From Anthoceros angustus (lineage: Eukaryota; Plantae; Anthocerotophyta), in assembly GCA_010909165.1 (NCBI GenBank), contig VJWM01000135.1, positions 62,001 through 126,000 on the forward strand: a stretch of 64,000 bases of DNA, written 5' to 3'. Shown piece after piece: positions 14,408 through 62,299 of this stretch. Made by a program: the position numbers and the translations under genes. How positions within the stretch are numbered: the stretch's first letter is position 1; each line of letters starts with the position of its first letter. The notes beneath the pieces were generated by a model. That model had not been told where the DNA came from. It did not search any database and worked only from the letters and a program-made list of their open reading frames with translations.

Positions 14408-14811
14408 ATGAGAACCAATGTAACATTGAGAATCAAACGATGTTTTATTGATTTTATTGTTGTCACAGCTGCAAAGCGGCTGGGTGACGAACCCACGACA
14501 CCAACGGCATGCATCGTTGAGTGTCCAGCAAAACCCCTACATGACCCTTCACAGTGAGAATCCTCTGCTACCTAAACTCCCCCTGATCGTGCAGAACATA
14601 TATTACACCCGCACTCGCAAATTCATTTTGATGCGTCTTGACGGGGGAGGTCTTCACCTAAAATGCCGCAGTGACGCAGAAATTGCGGCCAATGGTGGAC
14701 AGGCCCACTTCTGCATGCACTCACTAATAACTACCTCAACACGGTCCCTTGGGTGCAAGAGCATGCCAGCACGACAGCCGATCTTCTTGGCCGACAGAAC
14801 TGGAGCACACA

Positions 14812-38317: not shown

Positions 38318-38994
38318 TGTAAACCAATGCTGATTAATTAGGCTAGCTAATTAATTAACCTAGGTAATCAGGCCGATTATTAAATAACCAAATCAATTAG
38401 CGGGCATGAAACGTATGGGTTCGTTTAGGGCTCGAGCGAGGCGTGAAGGGCAAACGTATGATGCGGATGATGACGAACGTGAGTGATCGGGCAGCTCGGG
38501 CATTATTACGCAAGATGGTCGTGAGGTTGCGGCGTGGGCGCATGGCGACGGTGTGGAGTGAGACCGCGGCAACGGCCAGAGCAAGTGCGTACGTAAAATG
38601 CAGTGCGGGCTTAGCGGTAGTTGTCGAAGTTCTCAAGTAGCCTGCTTGCGGCTTGGACCTTCCGTGTGGCCGCTGGGGACATAAGATATCTTTGTGTGAT
38701 TTCTCGAATCGGAGCAAGTCGTGAGCGTCATGTCGTGTGTGTGGTCCGAGTGTGTCGTGTTGATCTTTGGTGAGGACTTACGCAACTCACCGAATCTGGT
38801 TTGTTAGGCGGTGTGCTGAAGATCTGCTGGTGTTTCGAGTTGGTCGATCCGCTGGCCGCGCCGTAGGTGTTGTGAAACCGAGATTGCGTCACGGTGGTTC
38901 ACTTTGTGATTTTACCCAAACCGGTTTTGAGTGAACAAGACACATTAGCGCTCCTTGCGGTAGACGATGTTTCTTCGTATGGTTTTACTCGACA
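38318..38994 (+). repeat. 5' LTR of the DNMT-Gypsy element
   Basis: Begins TGT(A/C)AA at the homology boundary with the other copies. The tentative end is CTCGACA (near-inverted TGTCAAG). Homologous to 46363-46920, 47709-48368, 60666-61336 and 61490-62152. Confidence 0.75.
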
Positions 38995-39612
38995 ACCGCT
39001 TTCTCGAAACTTGCCGCCATCGGCTTGGTGTCTTTGGTTGTTGTGTGCACAAAGACCTACCTGTCCCGATTCATGGGCATCATGGTGTGGACTTAACGTG
39101 CTACAGTTTTGTGAGCTAAGGGAGTGACAGGATACTCACCTGGCTGAGTGTCTGGTGGAGGGTGGTACACCTATCTCTGAGCTTCCTGTTGGTGTTCTAG
39201 CAAGGAGTCAGGGTCAAGTCAGCAGGCACAAATTTTTGTGTAATACTCTCACCTTTCCTAACCTCCTGTTAATTACCGACTTTGTTACTTTTGCATGGGC
39301 TATATATGTCATCTGATGGGAGCGATGAGGAGCCAGCCTATCATTTGAGAAGCGAGGCACTACAGCGACCTTGGGTCTCACAATGGAGAGCACGCGTCAG
39401 CAATTTGTGAGGCTTGGTTCATCCGAGTTAGGGGCGGTTGAGGAGCCTGATGCATCATCCTCTACCTCCGGCCGAGTACCACGGGCAGTCTTGGGGTAGT
39501 GTCCGGTCCTGTTGAAGCAGTAGGAGTGAGTTGGTCACCTCTATCGACCATTGTTCAGATCGTGAGTGGAGCTACCAGTTCTGAGGAGGAGGAGTCTGGG
39601 AAGTCTGATACC

Positions 39613-40740
39613 ATGGAAGGATCTGGAGCAGCTGTTCACAAGTCCGAGAAGTTTTCTGGTAGACCAGGGACGCAGACTCTTAGGGACTTCAAACTGTTTT
39701 ATGGCTTCTTAACTAGTCGCGTCAGGTTTAAGCATGGAGCCGCCTACACTCATCGGTACATGTTTGAACAGCTGCCTGGGTATCTAGCGGATGAGGCCCT
39801 GGATCTGTTTGAGATTCATGCACCAGAAATGTTGGCAGTAGTGGAGAAGCCTAACCCTGCCTACGCAGCGGCTGCAAGTGGCATACAACAGTTTGATGGC
39901 CACTGCGGTAACCGCTCATCAAGCAGGGATTGCAGCTGGCACAATTGCAGCGTCCGTCCCACCACCTACAGTGGTGAACATGACTCCACAGGAGATGGCT
40001 ATCGCTACAGCTGGCGTTCCAGATATGTTAGATGTGCCCAATCATGACAACCCTGTAGAAGACTTCTTTGCAATTTTGGATAAGGCCTTTCCAACCAAGA
40101 CCCCTGAGAAAATTGCCGAGCTTGCAGCCTTTGCGCGCAAGAAGGGTGAAACAGTACAGATGGCCTTTAGGCGATTACAGAAATTGAGGGATGGCACGGG
40201 TATGTTGGTGACGGGAGGCCTGAAGTTCTTGGGCGCCTTGGCCCCATGTTTCATTATCGACTCTTTACTACGTTGGTTGACAAGTATGGGGACAACTACA
40301 CACTGGATCAGGTCTATCGGGAAGCGGAGAAGAAGGAGTTGGCCTTCTCGATGCTTCCCAAGCATACCAAGGCTTTCCACCATTACCAAAGAATGTTTTC
40401 GTGAAGGGTAGTTCAAGAATAACGCAGAGTGTCACAACAAGGGCAAGGAGTCCAAGCCCGACCAAGTGAGGGCAAGCGCATCACCACACTTTGTAACAGT
40501 GTGGCGGTCTTTGAACACCTTTTGCACATGCGGAAGAGTCGACTCCTGCTGCGCTCATTGCAGAAACCAGTCACGTGGGCGGTTTGTTTTTCAAAGTATC
40601 CGGGCGGCGACCTTGGAAAACAGGATAGACTCTAGTGCCGCCACTAAGCCTACCATTACTATTGGGCCCAGCAGCAGCATGTCGGCGGGCGGCTCGGGAG
40701 GAAATCACATCAGGAAGAGCCAAGTCAAGCGACAAGGCTA
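39613..40740 (+). CDS. gag of the DNMT-Gypsy element (frameshifted)
   Basis: MEGSGAAVHKSEKFSGRPGTQTLRDF..YLADEALDLFE, FFAILDKAFPTKTPEKIAELAAFARKKGET..AFRRL and a CAHCRKPxHVxxVC-like CCHC knuckle near 40550-40600. Confidence 0.75.
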
Positions 40741-41439
40741 AGGCTGCTGCTCAAATGAGCGCCAGAGCTGACTGCCCAGCTACCAAGCACTTTGGCGGCA
40801 AGCTTGAATGCTGCTAAGCCTGCCAATGCTATGGAACTCGTAACTGCCGGGACATCAGACGATCTTGGTGAAGATTATGGGCCAGTCATGGAGGCTTATG
40901 CAACACACAAGGAGCAGTCCAAGGCTGAACCATTGCATGGAAAAGGTCTAAGGCAGGTTGATTCGTCCAGAGCTGATGTACAGTTACCACAAACCTGGCT
41001 GGGTCACCTCTTAGGAGGCAAGTCACCGTCGGCAGGAGCTAGGCAATGCCTGTCTTTCCAAAGAACTTCCATCGAGTCCGGCATACCGGTGAGAGGGTCG
41101 ATCATCTACCTAAAGGGGATCAAGAGGAGCAAAGGATCGACCGGGTTCCTAGCCGATCACAAGCTAGACACACACAAGTCTCAGCAGTGCTCGATTCGAC
41201 CATGGTGTTATGGCGCAGGAGTTGTTGAAGAGGGTGTACACGCACCTTGCTCAAGGATGTAGGAATTGAAGAGGCTAACTTGGACACCATCTGCAGTCTC
41301 CACGGTGAGAATCTTTTGTTATGATTGCAGACCATCATGGTCGATGGATTCACTTGTTTCCGCAAGGCTGCAAAGTGACAATTGGCTTGGGAAAGTCGTG
41401 GTCTACCAATCGTCTGACCCACAAATCGCGCAAGGCCAC

Positions 41440-41760
41440 TAGTAGCGTGCTTGTGGACAATCGGGCTAGCCATGTCTTTGGTAAATGGATTTGCACCAAT
41501 GTGTTGTTGGACAGGAGCACACGGTGATCATAGGGAAGGTTGCTGGCTGCTGCGGCTAGAAGGGAGTGCGTTGAAGCCTTCCCCATGGAACATGCGCTTG
41601 AGGCGATTGAGCTGTGAAAGCAGTCCAACAGTCAAGATCACTTTGAAGCCCAACACGGCCAGATGAGGTGAGCTTGGCGGTCGTTGTCTAGTCACGGTGC
41701 CACCAATTATGACATCCTGTTGGGGCGAAATTTCTTCCTCGAGTCTCAATTGACAAGCTG
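41440..41760 (+). CDS. Retroviral-type aspartic protease domain (frameshifted)
   Basis: SVLVD-x-GASHVF at about 41445-41475 and NYDILLGRNFL at about 41705-41740. Confidence 0.7.
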
Positions 41761-42159
41761 GGCGAGCAGGCCTTTTTAGGCAGTTAGCGGCGAAGCGGTG
41801 CCTACCTACCTTGGATTTGCATGGTGCCTGAGGCTACACTGGTGGAAAGACAGCTGTATGGTGCAGATCCACCTTGGGGATGGGCCGTTCCCCTATTACC
41901 ACCAGTTATCGCTCAAGCATGGTTAGGAGTGTGGAGAGGATGAGGACATCCTCTCACATGCTCATGAGGGAGATGTGTTGGGAACACATGTCCTCTCGTG
42001 TCTCGATATCCGACCATTCGAGCCTCCCATAGCGGCCAAAGGCAAAGAAGTAAGCTCAGCGATTGCTCGTGTTATGCAAGTGCTGCAGAAAGCCTTCACA
42101 GACCCAGCCACAGGGGAGGGAGCACATGTTTCTCCCATTCAACAGTCTGTGATTACTTG

Positions 42160-43100
42160 GCTACCTTCATCACGAGGTATCACCTTGGTGGAGCTGTTTG
42201 GGGGCCTATGTACTGGTCTTGAGGCAGTGCTGAGGTGTGGCATCACAGTCTTCAGGTACATCTACTGTGATGTTTGTCCAGCTGTTAGGCATATTGCACA
42301 TCGGGCCAGGTCTGCAGTGATTTCAGCAATTTTCAGGCGGGCGTGGAGCATGTTTGACACTCTCCACAGGAACATTGATTACATCCAAGCACACGTTCAA
42401 GCCCTTGGGCATGTGGATTTCTTGATTGCGAGATGGAGTGCAAGGCCTATCCCAAGCCGGAAAGGAGCGGTTGCAAGATAACCGTTCGAGGCTTATTTAG
42501 GGATCGTGCAAGTACTTCACGCTGGGATCAACATCCTCAAGTGGCTTATCTCTGGAGAACACACCAGCCCAATTGGATGCTCGGCCACAATTGCGCGAGA
42601 CATGGGTACATGATCCGGACATCATTGGACCTCCTTCACCATGGATGCAGCTCGGTGGGCAGCTATGCTCAGACTCAGGAATTATTGGACCAATTTGGTC
42701 CCCTTACCTATCCTGCACTTGGCTTTCTGACAGCAATGACCAGGAGCCTGCCTCCTCTGAGGATGTCACGGATGACAATCATACTCCCAAGCCTGTTGCG
42801 GCCAGGCGAGCCCTTGGTTTCCTACCAACACACCTGGCCAGCCAAGGAGAACTCTGCCCACAGTGGTCAGCTATCCTGGCTCCTATGCTTATAGGAATAA
42901 CGGTCTGGTATGCTTTTTAATGAAGATACCAAGGTGTGGGAGGAACCTAGTGGAGGAGAGGGAACGGGTGATGGGTCTCCACACCCACAAAGACGCCGCA
43001 CCCAAGGCTTCCAGGCTCGAGGTTTGCGGCACTTGGCCGTGCCATGGATGTCGATTCGACCGGCCGGGTCACCTTTGCTTGGCTTTTCAGATGCTCACCG
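42160..43100 (+). CDS. DNMT3-like DNA cytosine-5 methyltransferase domain inside pol (copy 1, frameshifted)
   Basis: Motifs I-II ITLVELFGGLCTGLEAVLRCGITVFRYIYCDVC. Motif IV GHVDFLIA..WEC (about 42410-42445). Motif VI AYL-ENT (about 42545-42563). Motif VIII GSYA(H)R..YWTNL. Motif IX EERERVMG. Motif X LGRAMDV (about 43031-43052). Confidence 0.88.
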
Positions 43101-43299
43101 GACCTCGGTAGGACCCTTCTGTTCATACCGATTACTTTTCTTGTCATCCCGATCTTTGTTCACTTGCCATTCCACGGCTTTGCTCGGTCCTATCACCGAC
43201 GCAATGGGGTGGAGCACATGTTTCCCAAACTGTTGTTTACGTGGATCTAGGACCGGGGATCAACGGTGCCAAGGCTTCACCTACTATGGAAACTTTTGG

Positions 43300-44590
43300 T
43301 TGGACCATGGGTCCTCAGCTGGATTCAGGGCAGAGGCAGCGTATACGGGCTTTGCTTTTACAATACTCAGATTGTTTTGCTTTCAGCATGAAGGATTTGA
43401 AGAGGTGCAATGTCATGACCTTCAGGATTAAGCTCAACACCACTGAGCCTATCTACAGGCGCAGATACAGGTTGAGCCACTGAATGGGAAACTGTGGACG
43501 CTCGCTGCCAGGAGTTGTATAAGGCTGGGCTAATTAGGCCCTCTAGTTACGATTCTGCAGCCACTTCTTCCACCTAAGAAGGACAATGGCTTTGGGCGAA
43601 AACGAATGTGTGGGGACTATCGTCCCATCAATGCGGCATACGGATAGGTATCCTATGCCTCACTGGAGGAGTGTTTCAGCAGCGATGACGGGTCTAAGAT
43701 TCTTTTTTCTGGACTGCAGCGGGGCTTCAAGTGCAAAAGCGGCGAGAAGGAGGACATTCCCAAAACCAGGCGTTCATGGAGCCCACCATGGGAGTGGCTG
43801 GTCATGCCTTTTGGGTTCAAGAATGCACCGTGACTTTCCAAAGAGTCATGGACAAAATCTTGGCAGGCGCCTCATCTTTTGTGTTACATAGATGATGTAT
43901 TGGTCCATAGTGTGGACTTTGACACTCATCCGATGCATCCGGAGGATTTGTTCGAGGTCGCAAAGGCCCTAACATGTCATCGATAAGTGTGAATTTGCCA
44001 TGGACACAGTTGCATATCTTGGGCATCGGATTCTGCCAGATGGCATAACACCACATGCTGCTAAGGTGCAGGCCATCCAACAGATCCAAGCTCCAGCTAA
44101 TGTGCCTGCTCTTAGGGCTTTTTTAGGGCTGTGCAATTACTATAGGGTCTATGTTCAGGCCTTTAGCAGCATTGCTAAGCCCTTGAATGATCTGTTGCGT
44201 AAGGAGACAACCTGGGATTGGACAGAAAGTTGTCAAGCTGCGTTTGAGGGCTTGAAGAGCAAGCTGAGGCAAATGCCGATCATGGCGCTGATTTTCCAAG
44301 CCTTTTGTCCTCCATACATGGAGCATTTTGGGGGGCTAGCACAAGTGGATCTTGAAGGTCGAGAGGGTCATTGCCTATGCTTCAAGAAGCAACAACAGGC
44401 GGAAGCAAATTACTCCAGCTATGAAGGGAGTTGCTTGCGTGTGGGCTATCGCCATTTTCGCCTTATTCAGGGCGAATGTTCTTTTAGACCATCGCCCTTG
44501 AAATGGCGATGTCTAATACGGCTTAGTGGGAAACTCGCAAGGTGGGCAATGATTCTTGAGGACTATGAGTTTGAGGTGGTCCATCGGCTG
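43300..44590 (+). CDS. Reverse transcriptase and RNase H of the DNMT-Gypsy element (frameshifted)
   Basis: CGDYRPIN..TDRYPMP, WEWLVMPFGFKNAP, CYIDDVLVHS (about 43884), VAYLGHRI, LRAFLGLCNYYRVYV, WTESCQAAFEGLK, AEANYSSYEG and GKLARWAMILEDYEFEVVHR. Confidence 0.92.
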
Positions 44591-44879
44591 GAACCAAGCA
44601 CGCATCGTGATATCGCCACGCAACCCAGAGTAGCGAGGACAATCGGCTCGCCAGGGGCGGTGACATGGAGGAAACTCCTAATCTGCGGCTTTGGTGACCA
44701 TGCTGCGTGGTGCAGTGCATGCTACGTAGTTTCAACACAAGGATGTGTGGAGTGATGAAGCCACATTGCGGTATGTGAAGAGGCAAATGGATGCTAGCTT
44801 GGATGCACATCAAGAGAAGGTGCTGAGAGAGGCCTATTATGAGTGGAGGGATGGGTACCGCCGAGGAGGCCAACGGGCT

Positions 44880-45900
44880 GAAGCGTTTGGTGCCTCCACC
44901 ACAGGATCGCAGGGGCTTATCCATAGGGTGCATGAAGATCTAGGCCATTTTGGTGTGAAGCGCACCTCTGATTCCTCCATCCACATTTCCACCGGCATGG
45001 CATGTTCACTCGGTGCGAGGAGGTGGCTGTGTGTGCTCAATGACAGGTCAAGGCTTCTTTTAGCAACCCTCATTCGTAGGCTGCAGTGGTGCCCCATCAT
45101 GGGACTCTTCTTTAGGTGGTCCTGTGACTTGGCTGGAGAATTTCCACGCACACCACGTGGCAATGTTTACATCATGGTCATGATTGAACATTTTGCGAAG
45201 TGGGTGGGCCAGTAGCACTTCCGGACAAGACATCCACGAAGCCACTCAAAGCATTTTGCACAATGTGCTTAGCAGATTTGGGAGCGGCGAGTGTCTCACA
45301 GACAGGAGTCTGAATTGAGGTGAGTTTCGTGATCTGGATGGTGCACTTATTGACCGCGCTGGCCGTGATCACCCACAAGCGACGGGTTGGGCGAGAGGAT
45401 GGTGCACCATCAAGCAGGCGTTGAGAAAGCTATGCCTCACCAAGCCCAAGACAGTTGGGACTTGGCTTTGCCATACATTGCTATGGGCTACAGGATGAGC
45501 AAGCATGCATCGGCCAACTTTTCACCTTACTTCCTTTTGTTTGGAAGAGGCCGGTACCCACATGGCCATTGCCTTGAGGATGCAAGAAGTGTTGAGTTTG
45601 GATGACCCGAGTAGCATGGGCCAAGGCTATTGGGGAACGTGCCTTATTAGGCAATTGATGCCAATGGCTATGGCCAATCTCAAGATAGCTCGGCATCGTG
45701 ATACACTCGGTATGCTCATACCGAGTGGGAGTTTCCACCCTAAGGTCGGAAATTTCAGCGGGGGACTATGTCTATCTACGGCAAACACAGGATACTTTGG
45801 AGCCTAGCACCCAGACATGTGTTACGTGTGCGAGAGGTGCGAGAAATGGAGTGTTGTCTGGAGGGGTCGATGGGCGGGTTACAGCGGACCACATGAAGAA
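44880..45900 (+). CDS. Integrase of the DNMT-Gypsy element (frameshifted)
   Basis: HEDLGHFGVKRT (HHCC zinc finger), FFRWSCDLAGEFPRTPRGNVYIMVMIEHFAKWV, HPQAxGLAERM-like, WDLALPYIAMGYR..SPYFLLFGR and GDYVYLR. Confidence 0.88.
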
Positions 45901-45959
45901 TTGTGCCCCATGCCATCTCGCCCAACTTGGACCCCACGCTGGTCACAAGAAATTGGGTC

Positions 45960-46110
45960 CCTCCGGTTGACTATCCATGTCGGTGTGCGGAGAATTGATG
46001 ATCCAGCACTCATGTTGTTGTTGTGTGATGGTCGCAATGGCGGCTACCACCTATTTTGTCTTGACCACCACCGATCGAGGTGCCGAGAATTCGTGGTATT
46101 GCCCCTTTGC
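45960..46110 (+). CDS. PHD finger at the C-terminus of pol
   Basis: DYPCRxC..DDPALMLLCDGCNGGYHLFCL..VP..SWYCPFC (C4-H-C3). Repeated at about 47333-47460 and 60282-60413. Confidence 0.85.
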
Positions 46111-46362
46111 GAGCTAGGGACACGATGACGATCGGTGACTCCTTGGATTTTCCTTTGGCATCCGACAGAGCTTGCTGCAGCTTTGGTGGCTTGTAGCACC
46201 ACAGGGGATGAGGATTTACCGAGATTCCGTTCATCCTGCTCATTTTCTCACGATCCGTTCATAGCGACCTACTCGGAGGTGTGAGGTTAGGACTTTCGTT
46301 CGCGTACAATTTTGGTTGCCTAATGTCAAGGGCACTTTTGGCTAACATCTTGTTTCGGCCGG

Positions 46363-46920
46363 TGTCAAGCCATGCTGATTAATTAGGCTAGCTAATTAAT
46401 TAACCTAGGTAATCAGGCCGATTATTAAATAACCGATCCGAATTAGGCATGAAAGCGTATGGGTTCGTTTAGGGCTCGGGAGGCGAGGCGTGAAGGGCAA
46501 AGCGTATGATGCGGATGATGACGTGGTGGTGGGCAGCTCGGGCATTATTACGCAAGATGGTCGTGAGGTTGCGGCGTGGGCGCATGGCGCCGACGGTGTG
46601 GAGTGAGACCGCGGGCAGCGGCCGAGGAGCAAGTGCGGCAGATAAGTACCAGTGCGGGCTTAGCGAGTAGTTGTCGAAGTTCTCAAGTAGCGACTGTTGC
46701 GGCGACTTGGACCGTGTGGCCGGCTAGGGGACATAAGATATCTTTGTGTGATTTCTCGATGTCAGACAAGTCGTGAGCGTCATGTCGTGTGTGTGGTGGT
46801 GTGTCGTGTTGATCTTTGGTGAGGACTTCGCAACTCACCGAATCTGGTTTGTTAGGCGGTGTGCACAAGATCTGCTGGTGTTTCGAGTTGGTCGATCTGG
46901 CTGCGCGTGGTGTTTGGAAG
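46363..46920 (+). repeat. 3' LTR of the DNMT-Gypsy element (truncated by a jump back into integrase sequence)
   Basis: TGTCAAGCCATGCTGATTAATTAGGCTAGC... is homologous to the 5' LTR. Confidence 0.8.
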
Positions 46921-46924
46921 AGCC

Positions 46925-48490
46925 CGGTACCACTGGCCATTGCTCGCCGAGATGCAAGAAGTGTTGAGTTTGGATGACCCAGCCGCATGGGCCAAGGCTA
47001 TTGAGCGTGCGACCTTATTAGTGATGCCAATGGCTATGGCCAATCTCAAGATAGCTCGGCATCGTGATACACTCGGTATGCTCATACCGAGTGGGAGTTT
47101 CCACCCTAAGGTCGGAAATTTCAGCGAGGGACTATGTCTATCTATGCAAAACAGGATACTTTGGAGCCTAGCACCCAGACATGTGTTACGTGTGCGAGAG
47201 GTGCGAGAAATGGAGTGTTGTCTGGAGGGTCCGATGGGCGGGTTACAGCGGACCACATGAAGAATTGTGCCCCATGCCATCTCGCCCAACTTGGACCCCA
47301 CGCTGGTCACGAAATTGGGTCCCTCCGGTTGACTATCCATGTCGGTGTGCGGAGAATTGATGATCCAGCACTCATGTTGTTGTGTGATGGCTGCAATGGC
47401 GGCTACCACCTATTTTGTCTTGACCAGGTGCCGAGAGAATTCGTGGTATTGCCCCTTTGCGAGCTAGGGACACGATGACGATCGGTGACTCCTTGGATTT
47501 TCCTTTGGCATCAGCCAGGCTTCTGCTCGGTTTGGTGGCTTGTAGCACCACAGGGGATGAGGATTTACCGATTCCGTTCATCCTGCTCATTTTCTCACGA
47601 TCACGTTCATAGCGACCTACTCGAGAGTGTGAGGTTAGGACTTTCGTTCGCGTACAATTTTGGTTGCCTAATGTCAAGGGCACTTTTGGCTAACTTGTTT
47701 GACCACGGTGTCAAGCCATGCTGATTAATTAGGCTAGCTAATTAATTAACCTAGGTAATCACGATTATTAAATAACCGATCCGAATTAGCGGGCATGAAA
47801 GCGTATGGGTTCGTTTAGGGCTCGAGGCGGGCGTGAAGGGCAAAGCGTATGATGCGGATGATGACGTGGTGGTGGGCAGCTCGGGCATTATTACGCAAGA
47901 TGGGCTGTGAGGTTGCGGCGTGGCGCATGGCGGCGGGGTGTGGAGTGAGACCGCGGGCAGCGGCCGAGGAGCAAGTGCGGCCTGAGATAAGTACAGCGGG
48001 GCTTAGCGAGTAGTTGTCGAAGTTCTCAAGTAGCGACTTCTGCAGCACTTGACCTTCCGTGTAGCCGGCTAGGGGACATAAGATATCTTTGTGTGATTTC
48101 TCGATGTCAGACAAGTCGTGAGCGTCATGTCGTGTGTGTCCGAGTGTGTCGTGTTGATCTTTGGTGAGGACTTACTCACAGAATCTGGTTTGTTAGGCGG
48201 TGTGCAAGATCTGCTGTGTTCGAGTTGGGTGATCGGGCTTGCGTGGGTGTTGTGAGGAGATTGCGTCACGGTGGTTCACGATCGCGATTTTACCCAAACC
48301 GGTTTTGAGTGAACAAGACATTAATTAGCGCTCCTTGCGGTAGCGACGATGTTTCTTCGTATGGTTTTGATGAGGATTTACGATTCGTTCATCCTGCTCA
48401 TTTTCTCACGATCCGTTCATAGCGACCTACTCGAGAGTGTGAGGTTAGGACTTTCGTTCGCGTACAATTTTGGTTGCCTAATGTCAAGGG
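46925..48490 (+). mobile_element. Partial tandem re-copy of integrase C-terminus, PHD, 3' region and LTR
   Basis: Near-identical to 45570-46920 plus a fuller LTR (47709-48368). Confidence 0.8.
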
Positions 48491-51400
48491 CACTTTTGGC
48501 TGCTTGTTTGACGCGACACCACAACCTCCCCTCGGCGCAAGGCTGGGTTGCGTCGAGTGAATCATAGCGATTCCCTATGTCGGTGATCAATGTGATGGCT
48601 TCATCGGTTTGCCTTGTACGTCGTTGATGCCATTGGTGACAGAGTGACGCGATTGGCATGAGTTGAAGTATCCAGATGCAGAAGATTGAAGAAAAGCTCT
48701 TTCCTGTGAAATGATGACGGTGTTGCGCTCTGAACTGCTGGTTGAGCTGCAAATCCAGCTGTACGAGTCCTACTTGTTCTCAGTGGCCTTTTCCTGAGAA
48801 GATTCGCTCCTCCTCCATGATAAGCTTCTCGTGCTATCAAACCTATTGTCATTACGTGTCGCTCGTGTGTGGTGTCTTGGAAAGCCCCTTTGTGAGCAAG
48901 TCTGCATGTTCTCTCACATAACAGAGGGCGACTTGCTTCTTTACTCACCACCCGGATGAAGTGGTCTTATTTCAACGTGCTTCGTCCTTGCATGCAACAA
49001 CGGATTGGTCATTGCTATTCTTGTTGGTTGTCGCGCCAGCTCGGTTGGTAATCGCCCCTGGTTGACATCTTGCAGGCGGCGTATCCACGAATCTCCTTAG
49101 CCGCCGGTGAGGTTGCGGCATACTCCACTCGGTGGATGAAAGGCATCATTGGCATCTTCTTGCAAGCCCGAAACAAGTGAACCATTGAGCATAGCACAAT
49201 ATCTCTGCCCGACTTTCGCGTCGGGATCACGCCTCTGCGGCAGGTACCCGGTGCGCTGCTTACATGCGGTGCGGGAAGTCCTGAGATCGGTACCTTTTAG
49301 GTATCTAGCGGATGAGGCCTCGGATCCGCTTGAGATTCATGCACCAATGTTGGCGAGTAGAGAAGCCTAACCACCTTTCTGCAGCGGCTGCAAGTGGCAT
49401 ACAGTTTGATGGCCGCTGCGGTAGCCTCATCAGCGATTGCGGTGGCACGCTGCGTCAGTCCACCACATGGTGAACATGACTCCACGGAGATGGCTATCGC
49501 TACGGTGGCGTTCGGATATGTTAGATGTGCCCAATCATGACAACCTCAGAAGACTTCTTGCAATTTTGGATAAGGCCTTCCCAACCAAGACCCACGAGAA
49601 AATTGCCGAGCTTGCCTTTGCGCAAGAAGGGTGAAAGCAGTCTGATGGCCTTTAGGCGATTACAGTGAGGGATGGCACGGGTATGTTGGTGACGGGAGGC
49701 ACGAAGTTCTTGGCCTTGAAGGCCCGACCCCATGTTTCATTATCACTCTTTACTACGTTGGTTGACAAGTATGGGGACAACTACACACCTGGATCAGTCT
49801 GGAAGCGGAGAAGAAGGAGTTGGCCTTCTCGGGTATGCTTCCCATACCAAGGCTTTCCACCATTACCAAATGTTTTCGTGGAAGGGTAGTTCGTTCAGCA
49901 GTCATCAACAAGGGCAAGGAGTCCAAGCCAAGGGCAGCGCCACCACCACACTTTGTAACAGTGTGGCGGTTGAACACCTTTTGCCATGCAGATCGCGACT
50001 CCTTACACTGCGCTCATTGCAGAAACCAGTCACGTGGGCGGTTTGTTTTTCAAGTATCCGGAGCGGCGACCGATTCGAGGAGGAAGAGTCAGGAAGTCGA
50101 TACCATGGAAGGATCCGAGCATTGCTCACAAGTCCGAGAAGTTTTCGGTACGGGGCCAGACTCTTAGGGACTTCAAAGCTGTTTGCTTCTTAACTAGTCG
50201 CGTGTTTAAGCATGGAGCCGCCTACACTCAGCAGTACATGTTTGAGCAGTGCAGGTATCTAAGGATGCGCTTAACGCATGTCCGATTAGGCCTTGCCGAT
50301 TAGAGAGATATCTAGATGCAATGTTGTGACTGGGATATGCTCCGGGCGTGTCCGGTTAAAATCTGAAGACTACCATGACTTCACTATAGGGTACTAATTT
50401 CATTTCTTCTATTTCTTACGGTGTTTCGGACTATCTAGTGCAGGACACTTTTTCACTGCAGACAATTGGGCGTCTTGTGTCAGCTTCTTTCGAGTTGAAC
50501 TGTCTAGGGCGATCTACGTAGTCTTTGGTGGATGAAGAAAGTACATGGGGTTTTCTCAAAATGGACACCTAGAGCGTGCTTAAGGGTCCTATGTCTACGA
50601 TTTTGTACTCTTTGGCTAACAAGTCCTTGACATGTTGGATGATTTGAGCGGCTACCAAAGATGAAGTTATCCGTCGAGAGAGGTCATGATGACGAAATGC
50701 TCTTTACGCCTAAGGAGATAAGCCTGGGATCTGCGCTAAAGGTGAGAATCCGAGACTTCTTCAAGTATAAGTCTACGGTTTGCCCATACCGGCAGATTGT
50801 TTCAATCGTAAAGTGATTTAATAAGCTTACAGACCTTTTGTTGTCCTTGATATAGCCGAGGGTGGAGCATATAAATGTCTTCACTCAACGTCAGTATAAG
50901 AAAGCGCTTACGCCAACTTGATGGATGTCCAGACGGTGATGGGGCCGGTGCTTAAGTATCCTTATAGATGTTGATTTCCTGTGAGTAGCCGATTTTCTTC
51001 GTAGTCAAAACCGGAACTTGGTCAAGCCTCTGGCGACTAGTCAGCCTTGTATCTTGCGGTACCATCCGGATTCAACTTCCTCACAGTGCACTTACAAGAT
51101 ATTGGTTTGTGGCACGGAGGTCAAGATCCACGTTTTGTTGGCGAGTAGAGAAGCCTAACCACCTTTCTGCAGCGGCTGCAAGTGGCATACAGTTTGATGG
51201 CCGCTGCGGTAGCCTCATCAGCGATTGCGGTGGCACGCTGCGTCAGTCCACCACATGGTGAACATGACTCCACGGAGATGGCTATCGCTACGGTGGCGTT
51301 CGGATATGTTAGATGTGCCCAATCATGACAACCTCAGAAGACTTCTTGCAATTTTGGATAAGGCCTTCCCAACCAAGACCCACGAGAAAATTGCCGAGCT

Positions 51401-54400
51401 TGCCTTTGCGCAAGAAGGTGAAAGCAGTCTGATGGCCTTTAGGCGATTACAGTGAGGGATGGCACGGGTATGTTGGTGACGGGAGGCACGAAGTTCTTGG
51501 CCTTGAAGGCCCGACCCCATGTTTCATTATCACTCTTTACTACGTTGGTTGACAAGTATGGGGACAACTACACACCTGGATCAGTCTGGAAGCGGAGAAG
51601 AAGGAGTTGGCCTTCTCGGGTATGCTTCCCATACCAAGGCTTTCCACCATTACCAAATGTTTTCGTGGAAGGGTAGTTCGTTCAGCAGTCATCAACAAGG
51701 GCAAGGAGTCCAAGCCAAGGGCAGCGCCACCACCACACTTTGTAACAGTGTGGCGGTTGAACACCTTTTGCCATGCAGATCGCGACTCCTTACACTGCGC
51801 TCATTGCAGAAACCAGTCACGTGGGCGGTTTGTTTTTCAAGTATCCGGAGCGGCGACCTTGGAAAAGCGAGGATAGACTCTAGTGCCGCCACTAAGCCTA
51901 CCATTACTATTGGGCTGAACCGGCAGCACGGTGCCTCGGCGGGAGGCGACTGGAAATCACGAGGAGCCAAGTCAAGCGCGAAGCTAAGGCTGCTGCTCAA
52001 ATGATCGCCACAGGCGACCATGGTGACTACCAGTCAGCACTTTTGGCGGCAAGCTTGAATCTTGCTAAGCACCGCCAATGCTATGGAACTTGTAGCCGGA
52101 CATCGACGATCTTGGTGAAGATTATGGGCGATCATGGAGGCTTATGCAACACACAAGGAGCGGTCAAGGCTGAACCATTGAGCATAGCACAATATCTCTG
52201 CCCGACTTTCGCGTCGGGATCACGCCTCTGCGGCAGGTACCCGGTGCGCTGCTTACATGCGGTGCGGGAAGTCCTGAGATCGGTACCTTTTAGGTATCTA
52301 AGGATGCGCTTAACGCATGTCCGATTAGGCCTTGCCGATTAGAGAGATATCTAGATGCAATGTTGTGACTGGGATATGCTCCGGGCGTGTCCGGTTAAAA
52401 TCTGAAGACTACCATGACTTCACTATAGGGTACTAATTTCATTTCTTCTATTTCTTACGGTGTTTCGGACTATCTAGTGCAGGACACTTTTTCACTGCAG
52501 ACAATTGGGCGTCTTGTGTCAGCTTCTTTCGAGTTGAACTGTCTAGGGCGATCTACGTAGTCTTTGGTGGATGAAGAAAGTACATGGGGTTTTCTCAAAA
52601 TGGACACCTAGAGCGTGCTTAAGGGTCCTATGTCTACGATTTTGTACTCTTTGGCTAACAAGTCCTTGACATGTTGGATGATTTGAGCGGCTACCAAAGA
52701 TGAAGTTATCCGTCGAGAGAGGTCATGATGACGAAATGCTCTTTACGCCTAAGGAGATAAGCCTGGGATCTGCGCTAAAGGTGAGAATCGTTGGTGATGA
52801 TTGCATGACCATCATGGTCGATGGATTCACTTGTTTCGCAAGGCATGCCGACAATTGGCTTGGAAAGTCGTGGTCTACCAATCTGACCCACAAATCGCGC
52901 AAGGCCACGCGATAAATAACGTGCTTCGTCCTTGCATGCAACAACGGATTGGTCATTGCTATTCTTGTTGGTTGTCGCGCCAGCTCGGTTGGTAATCGCC
53001 CCTGGTTGACATCTTGCAGGCGGCGTATCCACGAATCTCCTTAGCCGCCGGTGAGGTTGCGGCATACTCCACTCGGTGGATGAAAGGCATCATTGGCATC
53101 TTCTTGCAAGCCCGAAACAAGTGAACCATTGAGCATAGCACAATATCTCTGCCCGACTTTCGCGTCGGGATCACGCCTCTGCGGCAGGTACCCGGTGCGC
53201 TGCTTACATGCGGTGCGGGAAGTCCTGAGATCGGTACCTTTTAGGTATCTAAGGATGCGCTTAACGCATGTCCGATTAGGCCTTGCCGATTAGAGAGATA
53301 TCTAGATGCAATGTTGTGACTGGGATATGCTCCGGGCGTGTCCGGTTAAAATCTGAAGACTACCATGACTTCACTATAGGGTACTAATTTCATTTCTTCT
53401 ATTTCTTACGGTGTTTCGGACTATCTAGTGCAGGACACTTTTTCACTGCAGACAATTGGGCGTCTTGTGTCAGCTTCTTTCGAGTTGAACTGTCTAGGGC
53501 GATCTACGTAGTCTTTGGTGGATGAAGAAAGTACATGGGGTTTTCTCAAAATGGACACCTAGAGCGTGCTTAAGGGTCCTATGTCTACGATTTTGTACTC
53601 TTTGGCTAACAAGTCCTTGACATGTTGGATGATTTGAGCGGCTACCAAAGATGAAGTTATCCGTCGAGAGAGGTCATGATGACGAAATGCTCTTTACGCC
53701 TAAGGAGATAAGCCTGGGATCTGCGCTAAAGGTGAGAATCCGAGACTTCTTCAAGTATAAGTCTACGGTTTGCCCATACCGGCAGATTGTTTCAATCGTA
53801 AAGTGATTTAATAAGCTTACAGACCTTTTGTTGTCCTTGATATAGCCGAGGGTGGAGCATATAAATGTCTTCACTCAACGTCAGTATAAGAAAGCGCTTA
53901 CGCCAACTTGATGGATGTCCAGACGGTGATGGGGCCGGTGCTTAAGTATCCTTATAGATGTTGATTTCCTGTGAGTAGCCGATTTTCTTCGTAGTCAAAA
54001 CCGGAACTTGGTCAAGCCTCTGGCGACTAGTCAGCCTTGTATCTTGCGGTACCATCCGGATTCAACTTCCTCACAGTGCACTTACAAGATATTGGTTTGT
54101 GGCACGGAGGTCAAGATCCACGTTTTGTTGGCGATCAATGAGTCATATTCAGATTTTCTTTGCGGTGTCCATTCGGGGTCCTGAATGCTTCCTCAATTGT
54201 GGAACATCCGCATTTCGATGGTGACATCGCTTTATGTAAAGCCACGTTGATATGATGAGTGTTCTTTGGTCTTTGTGCATGTCCTCCGGAGTTGGGGTTA
54301 GAGTAGCGGAGGCTCTACCGATTGAGTCTCGAGGCGTGATAGGCATCCTTCCTTTGGATCGAGGAGGACGGCGATGTGGTGGCCGTCTAAGTGGAGGCTC

Positions 54401-57400
54401 GTGACTCAAGGTAAGGGGTTCTGCAGGATGTTGGTCGGGTTAAATATCGTAAAGAGGTTAGCGATTCGTTGTGGTGGTTGACCTATGTTTGGTGGTGAAT
54501 GGAGTACAGGTTGAGTACAGGTTATCTTGAGTGGGGTTGTGGTTGTGGTTGGTAGGATTGCAGCCGACCTTGCTTGTACATCGTCAACTACAAGCTCATA
54601 ATCAGTGGGTTATATGTCTCCCCTCAAGGTCGAGAGGGAAGAAGGTGAATGGCCGGAAATGCTAGGAGGGGAAGAGGTGTAGAGGTGCACGGATTGCAGA
54701 TAAGTATTGAGCGAGGGTTGCTTCATGGAAATGTACCTGGAGAGAGCTACACGGTAGAAGGGTCAAGCAACTGTAAGGGTAGGAATAGCCTATGAAGAGC
54801 AACTTCTTACTTTTGTGGTCCCATTTCTTGCTTGGTCATCGGGGATATGGGCAAATCTTTGGGCTGCGAATATTGAGATGAGAGATCACGGGGCTTCTCC
54901 GGCGCTCATACGGTGTGATGTTGGGAAGCTCCTTCGTCGGTCTGTTCTTAAGATAATTAGCGTGGACGCTTTGCCCGATATCCTTGTGTGAGGCTGGCCG
55001 GCAGGCGAGGCAGAGATCTCCAGCGGTGGCGGTTGAGCCTTTACGCAGGTTACAGCTGGTGTCACGGGAGGCATGGTGGGGTTGCCATGCCCCTGGATGC
55101 GTGAACTCACAGAAAGAATGGCGAGGTACTCGCCAGCATTGTCGGTGAGTGCGACTTGAAGTCCCGTGTGCCGTACGCTAATGCTGAACTCTTGAAAACC
55201 GGAGAGGCCTGGTCCTTGTGCTTGAGAAAGTATATGTGGCAATAGCTCCACTCATCGGAAAAGTCAAAAATAGGAATGGCCACCAAAGAAGATGTGCTCA
55301 TATGGGCGGATATACGAATGGATGACTTGAGGCGTTTGCCCTTGTAGGTAAGGGTCATTGAAGGCAATTGATTTAGCTTGTATATTAGGACTTCACGGTA
55401 TAGATCATTTTAACATTGGGTCTCTTACATGGTTTGGGTTGGACGGTGATAACGAATGCTCATATACCGCTCAGCGTGCGAGGAGGAGTCGAGACTTGGA
55501 TAAGGACTTAAGACACGATTTTGGGCATCTACCATCGTGAGTAGTGAATATTTAAAAGATATAGGTCGTTGTATGGAAGGCCATGTCGAGAGTTGTTGGA
55601 GGGATCATTAAGCTTGTGAAAAGTCCAACCGTCAAGATCCACGTTTTGTTGGCGATCAATGAGTCATATTGATTTTCTGCGGGTCCATTCGGGGTCCCGA
55701 ATGCTTCCTCAATTGTGGAACATCCCATTTCGATGGTGACATCGCTTTATGCCACGCGTTGATATGATGAGTGTTACTGCGATGTACATTGCATGTCCTC
55801 TCGGTCTCGATATCCAGCCATTCCGAGCCTCCCATAGCTGCCAGGGGCACATGCGGCAAGCTCAAGAAAGCGATTGCTCGTGTTATGCAAGTCTGCGGAA
55901 AACCTTCACAGACCCGCCACGGGGAGGGAGCACATGTTTCCCCATTCAGCGATGCAGTGATTACTTGGCTACCTTCATCACGAGGTATTACCTTGGTGGA
56001 GCCGTTTGGGGCCTATGTCTTGGTCTTGAGGCGATCTTGAGGTGTGGCATCACGGTCTTGAGTACATCTTGTGATGTTTGTCCACCGTTAGGCATATTGC
56101 ACATCGGTGCACTGCTGCGGTGATTTCCCCAATTTTCCAGCGGGCGGTAGAGCATGTTTGACACTCTCCACGTAATATTCAAGACATCCAAGCACACGTT
56201 CAAGCCCTTGGGCATGTGGATTTGCTGATTGCAGGATGGGAGTGCCAAGGCCTATCCCAAGCTGGGAAAGGAGCAGGTTGCAAGATAACCGTTCAGGCTT
56301 ATTTAGGGATCTGGTGCAAGTACTTCACTGGCTACAGGATCAACATCCTCAAGTGGCTTATCTGCTGGAGAACACACCAACCCAATTGGATGCTCGGCCA
56401 CAAGCTGCAAGACATGGGCGATCCGACATCATTGGACCTCCCTTCACCATGGATGCTCGGTGGGCAGCTATGCTCACAGACTCTTATTGGACCAATTTGG
56501 TCCCCTTATCTATCCACACTTGGCTTTACAGGGAGCCCACCCGTCTCCTAGGATGTCACGGATGACAATCATACTCCCAAGCACTGCGGTAAGGAGGCGA
56601 GCCCCTTGGTTTCCTACCAACACACCGGCCGCCAAGGAGAACTACGCCCAGTCGGCTATCACGGCTCCTATGCTTATAGGAATAACGGTCTGGTATGCTT
56701 TTAATGAAGATACCAAGGTGTGGGAGGAACCTACATGGAGGAGAGGGAACGGGTGATGGGTCTCCACACCCACAAAGACGGCCGCACCCAAGGCTTCAGG
56801 CTCGGAGGTTGCGGCACTTGGCCGTGCCATGGATGTCGGTGCTCGACGGGGTCGACCTTTGCTTGGCTTTTCAGATGCTCACGGACCTCGGCGCAGGACC
56901 CTTCTTTTGTTCATACCCGGTACTTTTCTTGTCATCATCTTTGTTCACTTGCCATTTCAGCTTTAGCTCTTGGTCCCATCACCGATAGAATGGGGTGGAG
57001 CACATGTTTCCCAAAACTGTTGTTTACCTTGATGGATCTAGGACCGGGATCAACTACAAGACTTCACCTACCATGGAAACTTTTGGTTGGACCATGGGTC
57101 CTCAGTGGATTAGGCGGTGATATCAGGCTTTGCTTTTACAATACTCAGTTGTTTTGCTTTCGGCATGAAGGATTTGAAGAGGTGCAATGTCATGACCTTG
57201 ATTAAGGACATGCTTGTGCTTGAAACATGTCTTTGAAAGTCCTCCGGATGGCGTTGGAAGTGGCTTGGCCACTTGTGTGTATCATCATACTCTTGTCAAT
57301 GGCGAAATCAAAATGCTACAGACGCTTATCCTTCTTAATCCAAGCTGCAACCTAGTCAATTGCAGGAGGATTAGGCTGTAGTGGAAGGTTGGCGGCAGTT

Positions 57401-60400: not shown

Positions 60401-60660
60401 ATTGCCCCTTTGCCGAGCTAGGGACACGATGTGATCGGTGACTCCTTGGATTTTCCTTTGGCATCCGACAGAGCTTGCTGCAGCTTTGGTGGCTTGTAGC
60501 ACCACCGGGGGATGAGGATTTACGATTCCGTTCATCCTGCTCATTTTCTCGATCACGTTCATAGCGACCTACTCGAGAGTGTGAGGTTAGGACTTTCGTT
60601 CGCGTACAATTTTGGTTGCCTAATGTCAAGGGCACTTTTGGCTAACATCTTGTTTATTAC
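48490..60660. mobile_element. Mosaic of DNMT-Gypsy fragments (+) and Copia family-2 fragments (-)
   Basis: Gypsy gag (49.3-50.2 and 51.1-52.2 kb), protease-adjacent (52.8 kb), DNMT (55.8-56.9 kb), RT (57.0-58.2 kb) and RH-IN-PHD (58.6-60.4 kb). These alternate with Copia RH/RT (48.5-49.3, 50.25-51.1, 52.2-54.1 kb), integrase (54.6-55.4 kb; FSDEWSYCHIYFLKHKDQ, LRTDR) and gag start (57.2-57.5, 58.2-58.5 kb; HDLMGIVDGT). Confidence 0.85.
55960..56900 (+). CDS. DNMT3-like methyltransferase domain, copy 2 (frameshifted)
   Basis: DLLIAGWECQGLSQAGKGAG (GWEC at 56234-56245), LQDNRSGLFRDLVQVLHWLQDQHPQVAYLLENTP, GSYAHR, SYWTNLVP, EERERVMG and LGRAMDV. Confidence 0.88.
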
Positions 60661-60665
60661 GGCTG

Positions 60666-62152: not shown

Positions 62153-62299
62153 GATGAGGATTTACCAGATTCCGCTCATCCTCGCTCATTTTCTCACGAT
62201 CCGTTCATAGCGACCTACTCGAGAGTGTGAGGTTAGGACTTTCGTTCGCGTACAATTTTGGTTGCCTAATGTCAAGGGCACTTTTGGCTGCTTCTTGTT

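What the first reader, a model, noticed from the sequence alone, without database searches (positions are those of the whole stretch)
38318..46920. Ty3/Gypsy retrotransposon encoding its own DNMT3-like DNA methyltransferase in an apparent land plant
Seen: between protease and RT is a full, non-permuted set of C5-MTase motifs. These are I-II (ELFGGLCTGL..GITVFRYIYCDVC), IV (DLLIAGWECQGLSQAG), VI (YLLENT), VIII (DAA..GSYAHR..YWTNL), IX (EERERVMG) and X (LGRAMDV), recoverable from two copies (42.2-43.1 and 56.0-56.9 kb). Known: the segments resemble DNMT3 (SLFDGIATGL..GIQVDRYIASEVC; AAHRARYFWGNL; LGRSWSV), not the circularly permuted plant DRM. DNMT-carrying retrotransposons have been reported from Symbiodinium dinoflagellates and the charophyte Klebsormidium (de Mendoza et al. 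2018, as I recall); I know of no established embryophyte case. Inference: the element may methylate its own cDNA or insertion site, for mimicry or self-regulation, and may be a streptophyte lineage that survived onto land.
Basis: partly seen in the sequence, partly recalled or inferred. Interest (0 to 1): 0.93.

Follow-up and report, generated by a model that had tools for sequence, protein, structure and literature searches.

The report
Decayed jumping gene carrying DNA methyltransferase
The window holds two broken copies of a Ty3/Gypsy retrotransposon that carries its own DNMT3-like DNA methyltransferase, a kind described in the alga Klebsormidium, which I also found unremarked in public liverwort and moss genomes.

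Summary
Motifs I, IV, VI, VIII, IX and X of a C5 cytosine methyltransferase lie in normal order on the + strand at 42128-43088 and 55792-56850. They sit between protease and reverse transcriptase of a Ty3/Gypsy element that ends in an integrase-PHD finger.

A family HMM hits only these two places in the window (best pieces E 2e-19 and 3.6e-12). Both copies are broken: at least 8 and 7 frame changes inside the domain, one pair of them shared.

The domain is DNMT3-like, not DRM-like. The family profile hits DNMT3A at 5e-19, against 8e-10 for tobacco DRM. A confident model of a liverwort relative matches only DNMT3A/B/C structures.

The element has split direct repeats (A-coding-B-A-B), as described for KnitGypsy-Dnmt3 of Klebsormidium. 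I therefore rate it a new member of a known kind.

The claim of no embryophyte case does not hold for the data. The same gag-PR-DNMT-RT-RH-INT-PHD family is annotated as hypothetical proteins in Marchantia, Calypogeia and Sphagnum, including one near-intact Marchantia copy. I found no paper that says so.

Scan notes list at least 8 more such pieces in this genome (unchecked). Function is untested. No sequencing run was listed.

The parts
38318..39030 (+). Direct repeat A1 at the 5' end of copy 1. It starts TGT, as the Marchantia A repeat starts TGTCA. Its last ~43 nt are shared with the start of B.
   Evidence: Self-BLAST and alignment of five A copies
39600..40540 (+). gag-like region of copy 1 (broken frames)
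   Evidence: Collinear with the ORFs upstream of the DNMT in L001 at 38-59% amino-acid identity. No Pfam hit.
41300..41730 (+). Protease region, approximate. An active-site-like string, VLVDNRASHVF, lies at 41447-41479.
   Evidence: String search; weak match to L001 at 41550-41660; position relative to PR in P0158 and the Marchantia ORF1. Weakest part of the annotation.
42128..43088 (+). DNMT3-like C5-MTase domain of copy 1, motifs I to X in normal order, at least 8 frame changes
43289..43970 (+). Reverse transcriptase of copy 1
   Evidence: tblastn of Marchantia ORF2 and of database polyproteins; weak RVT_1 hit
43985..44590 (+). RNase H of copy 1
   Evidence: tblastn at 43% identity to Marchantia ORF2; RT_RNaseH_2 at E 0.0011
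44740..45765 (+). Integrase of copy 1 (zinc-binding and core regions)
   Evidence: tblastn; Integrase_H2C2 at E 0.049
45930..46110 (+). PHD finger after the integrase (core CDGRNGGYHLFCLD at 46024-46065)
   Evidence: The duplicate at 47383-47424 scores 22.7 bits for PF00628 (cut-off 24). The Marchantia homologue scores 41.7 bits.
46207..46354 (+). Direct repeat B1
   Evidence: Six B copies
46361..46914 (+). Direct repeat A2, truncated by the internal duplication
46911..48251 (+). Tandem duplicate of 45538-46914 (integrase end, PHD, B at 47556-47703, then A3). A3 itself spans 47707-48368, so it runs about 117 nt beyond the duplicated stretch.
   Evidence: 91% identity
48369..48512 (+). Last B of copy 1, followed by the shared 'XY' repeat
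49300..55790 (+). Rearranged 5' half of copy 2: gag and PR fragments interleaved with XY fragments and 100%-identical local duplications
55792..56850 (+). DNMT3-like domain of copy 2, at least 7 frame changes. Motif IV is intact, as GWEC.
57517..60505 (+). RT, RNase H, integrase and PHD of copy 2 (PHD core at 60330-60365)
60511..62299 (+). 3' repeats of copy 2: B 60511-60654, A 60665-61336, B 61337-61478, A 61490-62152, B 62153-62299

Best explanation
The stretch holds two old, decayed copies of one Ty3/Gypsy-type retrotransposon. They are probably duplicates of one already damaged insertion. The family carries a DNMT3-derived C5 cytosine methyltransferase domain.

The element reads A - gag - protease - DNMT - RT - RNase H - integrase - PHD finger - B - A - B. 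That is Gypsy-type proteins framed by split direct repeats.

It belongs to a streptophyte lineage, which I call type B (DNMT ahead of RT). This lineage also lives in Closterium, Marchantia, Calypogeia and Sphagnum. It is of the kind published as KnitGypsy-Dnmt3.

What is shown:
- the domain's identity, position and order;
- the repeat layout;
- the family's spread;
- conservation of the catalytic motifs across the family.

What is inferred:
- In intact relatives the methyltransferase is made as part of a gag-PR-DNMT protein. In Marchantia and one metagenome element this sits upstream of a conserved in-frame stop codon.
- After protease cleavage it methylates the element's own cDNA or new insertion, as de Mendoza et al. 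2018 proposed.
- The PHD finger steers integration by reading a histone tail, as chromodomains do in chromoviruses.

The two copies in this window are, as assembled, unable to make any of these proteins.
For: - Motifs and family HMM hits occur only at the two loci and are collinear I to X.
- Domain order was read from tblastn.
- A phmmer search of 1.84 billion proteins gave 253 hits. These include polyproteins that pass the Pfam PF00145 cut-off.
- The same gag-PR-DNMT-RT order is seen in L001/L005 (run of a related species), L003, P0158, P0176, and Marchantia P0170, P0173 and P0186.
- Careful tree: type A versus type B split at 100/96. The window groups with P0001 at 100/88.
- The profile scores DNMT3A at 5e-19, against DRM at 8e-10 and HhaI at 6e-8.
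- An AlphaFold model of the Marchantia domain has pLDDT 92.5. Its top 50 PDB matches are all DNMT3A/B/C, with target-normalised TM up to 0.84.
- Split repeats occur in the window. In Marchantia L007, A1/A2 are 99% and B1/B2 100% identical. This matches the legend of Fig. 4c of PMC5890265.
- Marchantia L007 has two long stop-free stretches. One carries PF00145. The other carries RVT_1, RNase H, rve and PHD.
Against: - Neither window copy has an open frame.
- The window's own pieces reach only sub-threshold Pfam and PDB scores (15.8 bits; E 0.13).
- Motif IV reads EC where the family majority, like other C5-MTases, has PC, and motif VI reads ENT instead of ENV. Catalysis in this sub-lineage is therefore unproven.
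- I could not fetch K. nitens sequences, so membership in the KnitGypsy-Dnmt3 clade rests on architecture, not on a joint tree.
- KnitGypsy-Dnmt3 itself showed no activity in the yeast assay, which the authors call inconclusive.
- No methylation or expression data could be obtained.
Confidence: 0.8

Rival explanations
1. The frame breaks are assembly errors. On this reading the copies are really intact and perhaps active.
For: - The copies differ by 2.2-4.1 indel events per 100 sites and the transition share is only about 0.5. This is unlike ordinary decay.
- Differences cluster in short scrambled patches.
- Earlier agents reported assembly-type frame breaks elsewhere in this genome.
- 100%-identical local duplications nearby suggest assembler trouble.
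Against: - Exons of the LCAT-like host gene in the same window align to a related species without a single indel. The assembly is therefore not generally noisy here.
- One pair of compensating frame changes at motif VIII is shared by both copies.
- The A repeats of one element differ by 8-12%.
- L001, from a short-read assembly of the related species, is also frame-broken.
Confidence: 0.15
2. The DNMT segment is a host DNMT3 fragment or a nested foreign insertion that merely lies inside the element. It would not be part of the element's polyprotein.
For: The window copies are too broken to show one continuous PR-DNMT-RT frame.
Against: - The same position recurs in diverged elements of several taxa.
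- It is in frame with gag-PR in a 1362-aa stop-free stretch of Marchantia L007, and with RT in P0176.
- The DNMT tree mirrors the element architecture.
Confidence: 0.03
3. The contig is algal or other contamination, not the plant's own DNA.
For: Most close relatives come from metagenomes.
Against: - The same contig carries a streptophyte-type F-box gene and an LCAT-like gene.
- Positions 10965-19697 are collinear with a contig of a related species. That species' run also holds related DNMT-Gypsy pieces.
- The family sits in chromosome-scale Marchantia and Sphagnum assemblies.
Confidence: 0.03
4. In the window's sub-lineage the domain no longer methylates DNA. Motif IV Pro-Cys has become Glu-Cys and motif VI ENV has become ENT. 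The domain would be kept for a non-catalytic role, such as DNA or chromatin binding or partnering with host DNMT3 as DNMT3L does.
For: - GWEC and ENT are not errors. P0002, P0003 and many long type A polyproteins share them (P0007, P0019, Monoraphidium P0205).
- L003 has even lost the cysteine (AY).
Against: - The nucleophile Cys, the ENx Glu, the motif VIII arginines and motifs I, IX and X are all kept.
- The variant persists in 2000-aa open polyproteins, which argues for selection but does not say for what.
Confidence: 0.2

Closest known systems
KnitGypsy-Dnmt3 of Klebsormidium nitens (de Mendoza et al. 2018, PMC5890265)
   Same: - A Gypsy-type polyprotein with a non-rearranged DNMT3-related domain inside the coding region.
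- Repeats laid out A-coding-B-A-B like a DIRS element.
- A streptophyte host.
- Key motifs conserved.
   Different: - The host here is reported as a land plant.
- The window copies are decayed and carry EC/ENT variants.
Unpublished 'hypothetical protein' elements of Marchantia polymorpha (e.g. Mp_4g09160 at AP019869.1:10223128-10246964), Calypogeia fissa and Sphagnum fallax
   Same: - Identical order: gag-PR-DNMT-RT-RH-INT-PHD.
- The same A/B split repeats; in Marchantia A starts TGTCA, in the window A1 starts TGT.
- The same DNMT clade.
   Different: - Only about 30% identity to the broken window domain.
- They form a different sub-clade from the window, which groups with P0001-P0003.
- They have canonical PC/ENV motifs.
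- The Marchantia copy is near-intact, with 99-100% identical repeats.
Type A metagenomic and chlorophyte Gypsy elements (RT-RH-DNMT-INT-PHD; e.g. P0007, Monoraphidium P0205)
   Same: - A homologous DNMT domain.
- The same integrase-PHD tail.
- The EC/ENT motif variants.
   Different: The DNMT sits after RNase H rather than before RT. They form a separate DNMT clade (100/96).
Cellular DNMT3A/3B/3C and plant DNMT3
   Same: - Best sequence matches (5e-19) and best structural matches (target-normalised TM 0.8).
- Motif order I to X.
- Motif VIII of the AHRxR..W.NL type.
   Different: There are no PWWP or ADD domains. The domain is embedded in a retrotransposon polyprotein. Identity is about 20%.
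Plant DRM methyltransferases
   Same: A distant DNMT3 relative.
   Different: DRM is circularly permuted; this domain is not. The profile matches DRM far more weakly, and only over motifs I-IV.
SymbioDIRS-Dnmt3, SymbioLINE-Dnmt and EpiLTRs (PMC5890265; bioRxiv 10.64898/2026.05.21.726589)
   Same: Retrotransposons that captured a cytosine methyltransferase.
   Different: They use different element classes (DIRS, LINE, chromovirus with DAM). Their DNMT origin differs (DNMT4-like in EpiLTRs). They use tyrosine recombinase or chromodomain instead of DDE integrase plus PHD.

Membership tests
Gypsy-DNMT3 retrotransposons (KnitGypsy-Dnmt3 kind) | Ty3/Gypsy protein order RT - RNase H - integrase | tested here: met
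   tblastn places RT at 43.3-43.97 kb, RH at 43.98-44.6 kb and INT at 44.7-45.8 kb.
Gypsy-DNMT3 retrotransposons (KnitGypsy-Dnmt3 kind) | Non-rearranged DNMT3-related C5-MTase domain inside the element's coding region | tested here: met
   Family HMM hits are collinear I to X at 42128-43088 and 55792-56850. In the window the domain is frame-broken. It is continuous with gag-PR or RT in relatives.
Gypsy-DNMT3 retrotransposons (KnitGypsy-Dnmt3 kind) | Split direct repeats A - coding - B - A - B | tested here: met
   The window has A x5 and B x6, in the order A...B-A-B(-A-B). The same layout is seen cleanly in Marchantia L007.
Gypsy-DNMT3 retrotransposons (KnitGypsy-Dnmt3 kind) | Groups with K. 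nitens elements in DNMT and RT trees | not testable with these tools
   No search returned a K. nitens sequence by name.
Gypsy-DNMT3 retrotransposons (KnitGypsy-Dnmt3 kind) | Key catalytic residues conserved and domain under purifying selection | tested here: inconclusive
   Cys, Glu (ENx), the motif VIII arginines and motifs I, IX and X are present. However, PC is EC, ENV is ENT, and the frames are broken. Across the family, 41 columns are invariant in 15 type B sequences.
DNMT3 family of C5-MTases | Closest sequence and fold relatives are DNMT3A/B/C | tested here: met
   The family profile scores 5e-19 against DNMT3A; the next families score 8e-10 or weaker. The fold search returns only DNMT3 chains in its top 50. 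The window piece alone scores E 0.13, with DNMT3A on top.
DNMT3 family of C5-MTases | Falls inside the DNMT3 clade in a tree with DNMT1, DNMT2, DNMT5, DRM and bacterial references | not tested
   No reference sequences could be obtained.
DNMT3 family of C5-MTases | Reader domains of cellular DNMT3 (PWWP, ADD, or the plant DUF) | tested here: not met
   Pfam finds none in intact relatives. The only reader-like domain is the PHD finger after the integrase.
DRM (domains rearranged methyltransferase) | Circular permutation: motifs VI-X before I-V | tested here: not met
   HMM positions run from 1 to 317 along the + strand in both copies.
Chromoviruses (Gypsy with a chromodomain after the integrase) | Chromodomain at the integrase C-terminus | tested here: not met
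   A PHD finger sits there instead.

The most novel reading that the evidence does not exclude
This DNMT-carrying Gypsy lineage may not be just a relic. It may have crossed from streptophyte algae into land plants and still be mobile in bryophytes. A Marchantia copy has 99-100% identical repeats and only one in-frame stop.

On this reading, the methyltransferase is made in excess as the tail of a gag-PR-DNMT protein, ahead of a read-through stop. It methylates the element's own new DNA. This would make a long-standing idea directly testable in a genetically tractable model plant.
Probability: 0.3. Interest if true: 0.75.

Novelty: new member of a known kind. Interest (0 to 1): 0.45.

Why it matters
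Retrotransposons that carry the host's own silencing enzyme are rare. Why they do so is unsolved, and the published streptophyte case comes from a single alga.

The same family sits in bryophyte genomes, including the model liverwort Marchantia. This extends the phenomenon to land plants and to organisms where knock-outs and methylomes are routine. It also gives a natural series of variants (PC versus EC, DNMT before RT versus after RNase H) for asking what the enzyme does for the element.

The two copies in this window add little themselves. They are decayed, and probably duplicates of one insertion.

Tried and rejected
- **Pfam on single stop-free pieces of copy 1.** No PF00145 hit, because the pieces are too short. 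I replaced this with a family HMM.
- **The look-up of sequencing runs on 41000-46900.** None was listed. No reads could be laid, so neither expression nor assembly accuracy could be checked directly.
- **Host identity.** The F-box protein found only one relative, from a related species' run.
- **Klebsormidium sequences.** None was returned by name. The paper's text and supplements do not give the KnitGypsy domain order.
- **Marchantia L006.** It proved a decayed copy without repeats. L007 was used instead.
- **Target-site duplication.** None was convincing, in Marchantia or in the window.
- **Conserved stop between DNMT and RT.** It cannot be read in the window because the frames are broken.
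- **CpG depletion.** The element (0.72-0.82) does not differ from the host background (0.61-0.70).
- **Chance motifs, a nested host fragment and contamination.** I considered and rejected these (see rivals).
- **Read-throughs.** X-joined read-throughs of each copy were used only inside scripts for alignment and trees.
Full report
**1. What is in the sequence**

Mapping the strings back to coordinates gives at least 8 frame changes within the domain of copy 1 (42179-43088). Copy 2 (55984-56843) has at least 7.

One pair of compensating changes around motif VIII is found at the same place in both copies. The string FTMDA(A) is followed by SVGSYA(H) in another frame, then the reading returns to ..YWTNL. 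This pair was therefore already present in their common ancestor. Most of the other breaks differ between the copies.

**2. Is it more than chance?**

A phmmer search used the longest stop-free piece (41927-42478, motif I up to motif IV) against 1.84 billion representative proteins. It gave 253 hits at E up to 0.001, the best at 6.5e-22.

Many hits are polyproteins of 1500-2100 aa. In these, Pfam finds RVT_1, RNase H, integrase and PHD, and PF00145 above its curated cut-off.

From 44 full-length domains I built an HMM and searched all 2062 stop-free pieces of the window on both strands. Only the two reported regions scored, and in profile order:
- Copy 1: 2e-19 (profile positions 1-49), 2.3e-5 (171-198) and 7.7e-13 (230-303).
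- Copy 2: 0.007, 4e-7 and 3.6e-12.

Pfam itself reaches only 15.8 bits (cut-off 22) on the motif IV piece of copy 2. It finds nothing on the copy 1 pieces. The window's own sequence thus passes a family test but not the generic Pfam threshold. That is what one expects from a domain cut into pieces of 20-80 residues.

**3. Anatomy of the element**

tblastn of database polyproteins and of the two Marchantia reading frames gives this order on the + strand:

| Part | Position |
|---|---|
| gag | about 39.6-40.5 kb |
| protease | about 41.3-41.7 kb (weak evidence) |
| DNMT | 42128-43088 |
| RT | 43289-43970 |
| RNase H | 43985-44590 |
| integrase | 44740-45765 |
| PHD finger | about 45.93-46.11 kb |

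RT before integrase is the Ty3/Gypsy order.

The repeats are not plain LTRs:
- A block A of about 670-710 nt occurs at 38318, 46361 (truncated), 47707, 60665 and 61490.
- A block B of about 145 nt occurs at 46207, 47556, 48369, 60511, 61337 and 62153.
- Copy 1 therefore reads A - coding - B - A(truncated) - [duplicate of 45538-46914] - B - A - B.
- Copy 2 ends B - A - B - A - B.

**4. The two copies are not independent**

They are collinear at a spacing of 13.8-14.3 kb. After the last B, both run into the same further repeat (48512-49314 and 50253-51144, against 62300-64000). Together with the shared frame changes, this points to a duplication of one already damaged insertion.

The 5' half of copy 2 (49.3-55.8 kb) is a patchwork of gag and protease fragments, pieces of that other repeat, and 100%-identical local duplications.

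**5. Decay or assembly error?**

The copies differ by 5-12% substitutions and 2.2-4.1 indel events per 100 sites, with a transition share near 0.5. That indel load is high for ordinary decay, and earlier agents reported assembly-type breaks elsewhere in this genome.

Against this, the LCAT-like host gene in this very window (11839-12689) aligns to a related species' contig with no indel outside its intron. Its differences are mostly at third codon positions. A related element from that species' short-read assembly is also frame-broken.

I read the copies as truly decayed and give 0.15 to the alternative. No sequencing run was listed for this stretch, so reads could not settle it.

**6. What kind of methyltransferase?**

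The motif order is I to X, so it is not the permuted DRM type.

A single intact relative (P0012) hits DNMT3B at 1.5e-11 and M.HhaI at 0.03. A profile of 15 type B domains gives these scores:

| Target | E-value |
|---|---|
| DNMT3A | 5e-19 |
| DNMT3C | 2e-18 |
| DNMT3B | 1e-16 |
| tobacco DRM | 8e-10 |
| HaeIII | 3e-8 |
| HhaI | 6e-8 |
| Arabidopsis DRM2 | 4e-6 |
| DNMT2 | 6e-5 |

An AlphaFold model of the domain of a Marchantia element has mean pLDDT 92.5 and pTM 0.92. Its first 50 Foldseek matches are all DNMT3A, 3B or 3C. The best has E 2.7e-19, and target-normalised TM reaches 0.84.

The window's own 184-aa piece puts DNMT3A first, but only at E 0.13.

I did not make a tree with reference DNMT families, because none could be obtained.

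**7. The family and where it lives**

Two architectures exist among relatives:
- Type A: RT-RH-DNMT-INT-PHD. This covers most metagenome polyproteins, Monoraphidium and Cymbomonas.
- Type B: gag-PR-DNMT-RT-RH-INT-PHD, as in the window.

Type B occurs in:
- two contigs of run SRR33208241 (L001, L005);
- a JGI metagenome contig (L003);
- P0158 (PR then DNMT) and P0176 (DNMT then RT);
- Closterium NIES-54;
- land plants: 17 differently named Marchantia polymorpha records from three assemblies, Calypogeia fissa, Sphagnum fallax and S. jensenii.

A careful IQ-TREE analysis used 64 domains, with the window copies read through with X at each break. It splits type A from type B at 100/96. It joins the window to P0001 (100/88), then to P0002 and P0003 (99/87). 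It makes this group sister to the rest of type B, which holds Closterium, liverworts and moss (97/82).

Run SRR33208241 comes from a relative of the window's organism. Its contig L008 is collinear with window 10965-19697 at 77-83% identity. The element family is thus resident in this plant lineage, and contamination is unlikely. The host genes are of streptophyte type. I could not name the species.

**8. A clean land-plant example**

Marchantia polymorpha Tak-1 chromosome 4 (AP019869.1:10223128-10246964, locus L007) holds an element with this layout:
- A1 at 6826-7122 and A2 at 17248-17545, 99% identical.
- B1 at 17134-17246 and B2 at 17545-17657, 100% identical.
- A purine run just before B1.
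- Two long stop-free stretches in the same frame.

The first stretch (1362 aa) carries a CCHC knuckle, a DSG protease site and PF00145 (35.5 bits). The second (1045 aa) carries RVT_1, RNase H, integrase and PHD (41.7 bits).

The single TAG that separates them lies at the same place in a second, diverged Marchantia copy (L006) and in the metagenome element L003. It is absent in P0176.

This suggests that in part of the family the methyltransferase belongs to the abundant upstream product, and that RT-INT is made by read-through. That is an inference from three sequences.

**9. Motif variants**

The window has GWEC for the usual GWPC in motif IV, and ENT for ENV in motif VI. P0002, P0003 and many long type A polyproteins share these variants, so they are real and old.

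Marchantia, Calypogeia and most type B sequences have PC and ENV. L003 has lost the cysteine.

Whether EC/ENT enzymes are active is unknown. I give 0.2 to a non-catalytic role in this sub-lineage.

**10. How it most likely works**

Shown:
- A DNMT3-derived domain has been kept, with 41 invariant columns among 15 type B sequences.
- It has held one fixed place in a Gypsy-type polyprotein across algae and bryophytes.

Inferred:
- The enzyme is released by the element's protease and methylates the element's cDNA or new insertion. This is the proposal of de Mendoza et al., who showed de novo CG methylation for dinoflagellate DIRS enzymes but obtained an inconclusive result for KnitGypsy.
- The PHD finger guides integration by reading histone H3.

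I put about 0.4 on the self-methylation part. In this window nothing can be expressed as assembled.

**11. Novelty**

I found only two sources that mention streptophyte Gypsy-DNMT3: the 2018 paper, and passing mentions in a 2025 paper and a 2026 preprint. I found no paper that reports it in a land plant or names the Marchantia genes. The library lacks most subscription journals.

The finding is therefore a new member of a known kind. Its wider value lies in the bryophyte distribution, not in these two relics.

The scan's own notes list at least eight further first-reader sightings of the same kind of element on other pieces of this genome, all unchecked.

Noticed in passing
L007:13835-13837; L006 about 12378; L003 about 11340: An in-frame TAG lies at the same spot between the DNMT and RT in two diverged Marchantia copies and one metagenome element, each time followed by a Gln codon. 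P0176 lacks it. This suggests that gag-PR-DNMT is the main product and that RT-INT is made by stop read-through.
   Followed up: partly
window 10965-19697 versus L008 (Logan SRR33208241 contig 9159): The host genes (LCAT-like, F-box, metallophosphatase and others) are collinear with a contig of a related species at 77-83% nucleotide identity. The LCAT-like exons show no indels, so the assembly is clean there.
   Followed up: partly
window 49348-54134: Blocks that are 99.9-100% identical (50253-51144 = 53243-54134; 52171-52789 = 53122-53740; 49348-50071 = 51136-51858) lie in a region where other repeats differ by about 10%. This is either a very recent rearrangement or an assembly artefact.
   Followed up: no
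window 48512-49314, 50253-51144, 52918-54134, 62300-64000: An unclassified repeat of at least 1.7 kb ('XY') follows the last B of both element copies and is interleaved with gag fragments of copy 2.
   Followed up: no
window 45538-46914 and 46911-48251: A 1.37-kb tandem duplication covers the integrase end, PHD finger, B and A within copy 1. Copy 2 instead has an extra A-B unit (60511-61478 versus 61337-62297).
   Followed up: partly
P0160 (NCBI record): A member of this eukaryotic retrotransposon DNMT clade is deposited as 'MAG TPA: DNA cytosine methyltransferase [Candidatus Obscuribacterales bacterium]'. This is probably a mis-binned eukaryotic contig.
   Followed up: no
window 5305-5376 (-): tRNA-Met (CAT), 54.9 bits in Rfam. 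It is the only RNA family hit in the window.
   Followed up: no
window 29674-31035 (-): An open reading frame of 453 aa has no Pfam match.
   Followed up: no
L007:6826 and window 38318, 46363, 47709: The A repeat starts TGTCA in Marchantia and in window A2-A5 (A1 starts TGTAA) and ends in a T-run (..TTTTA in Marchantia, ..GGTTTT in the window). This hints at conserved termini across very distant hosts.
   Followed up: no
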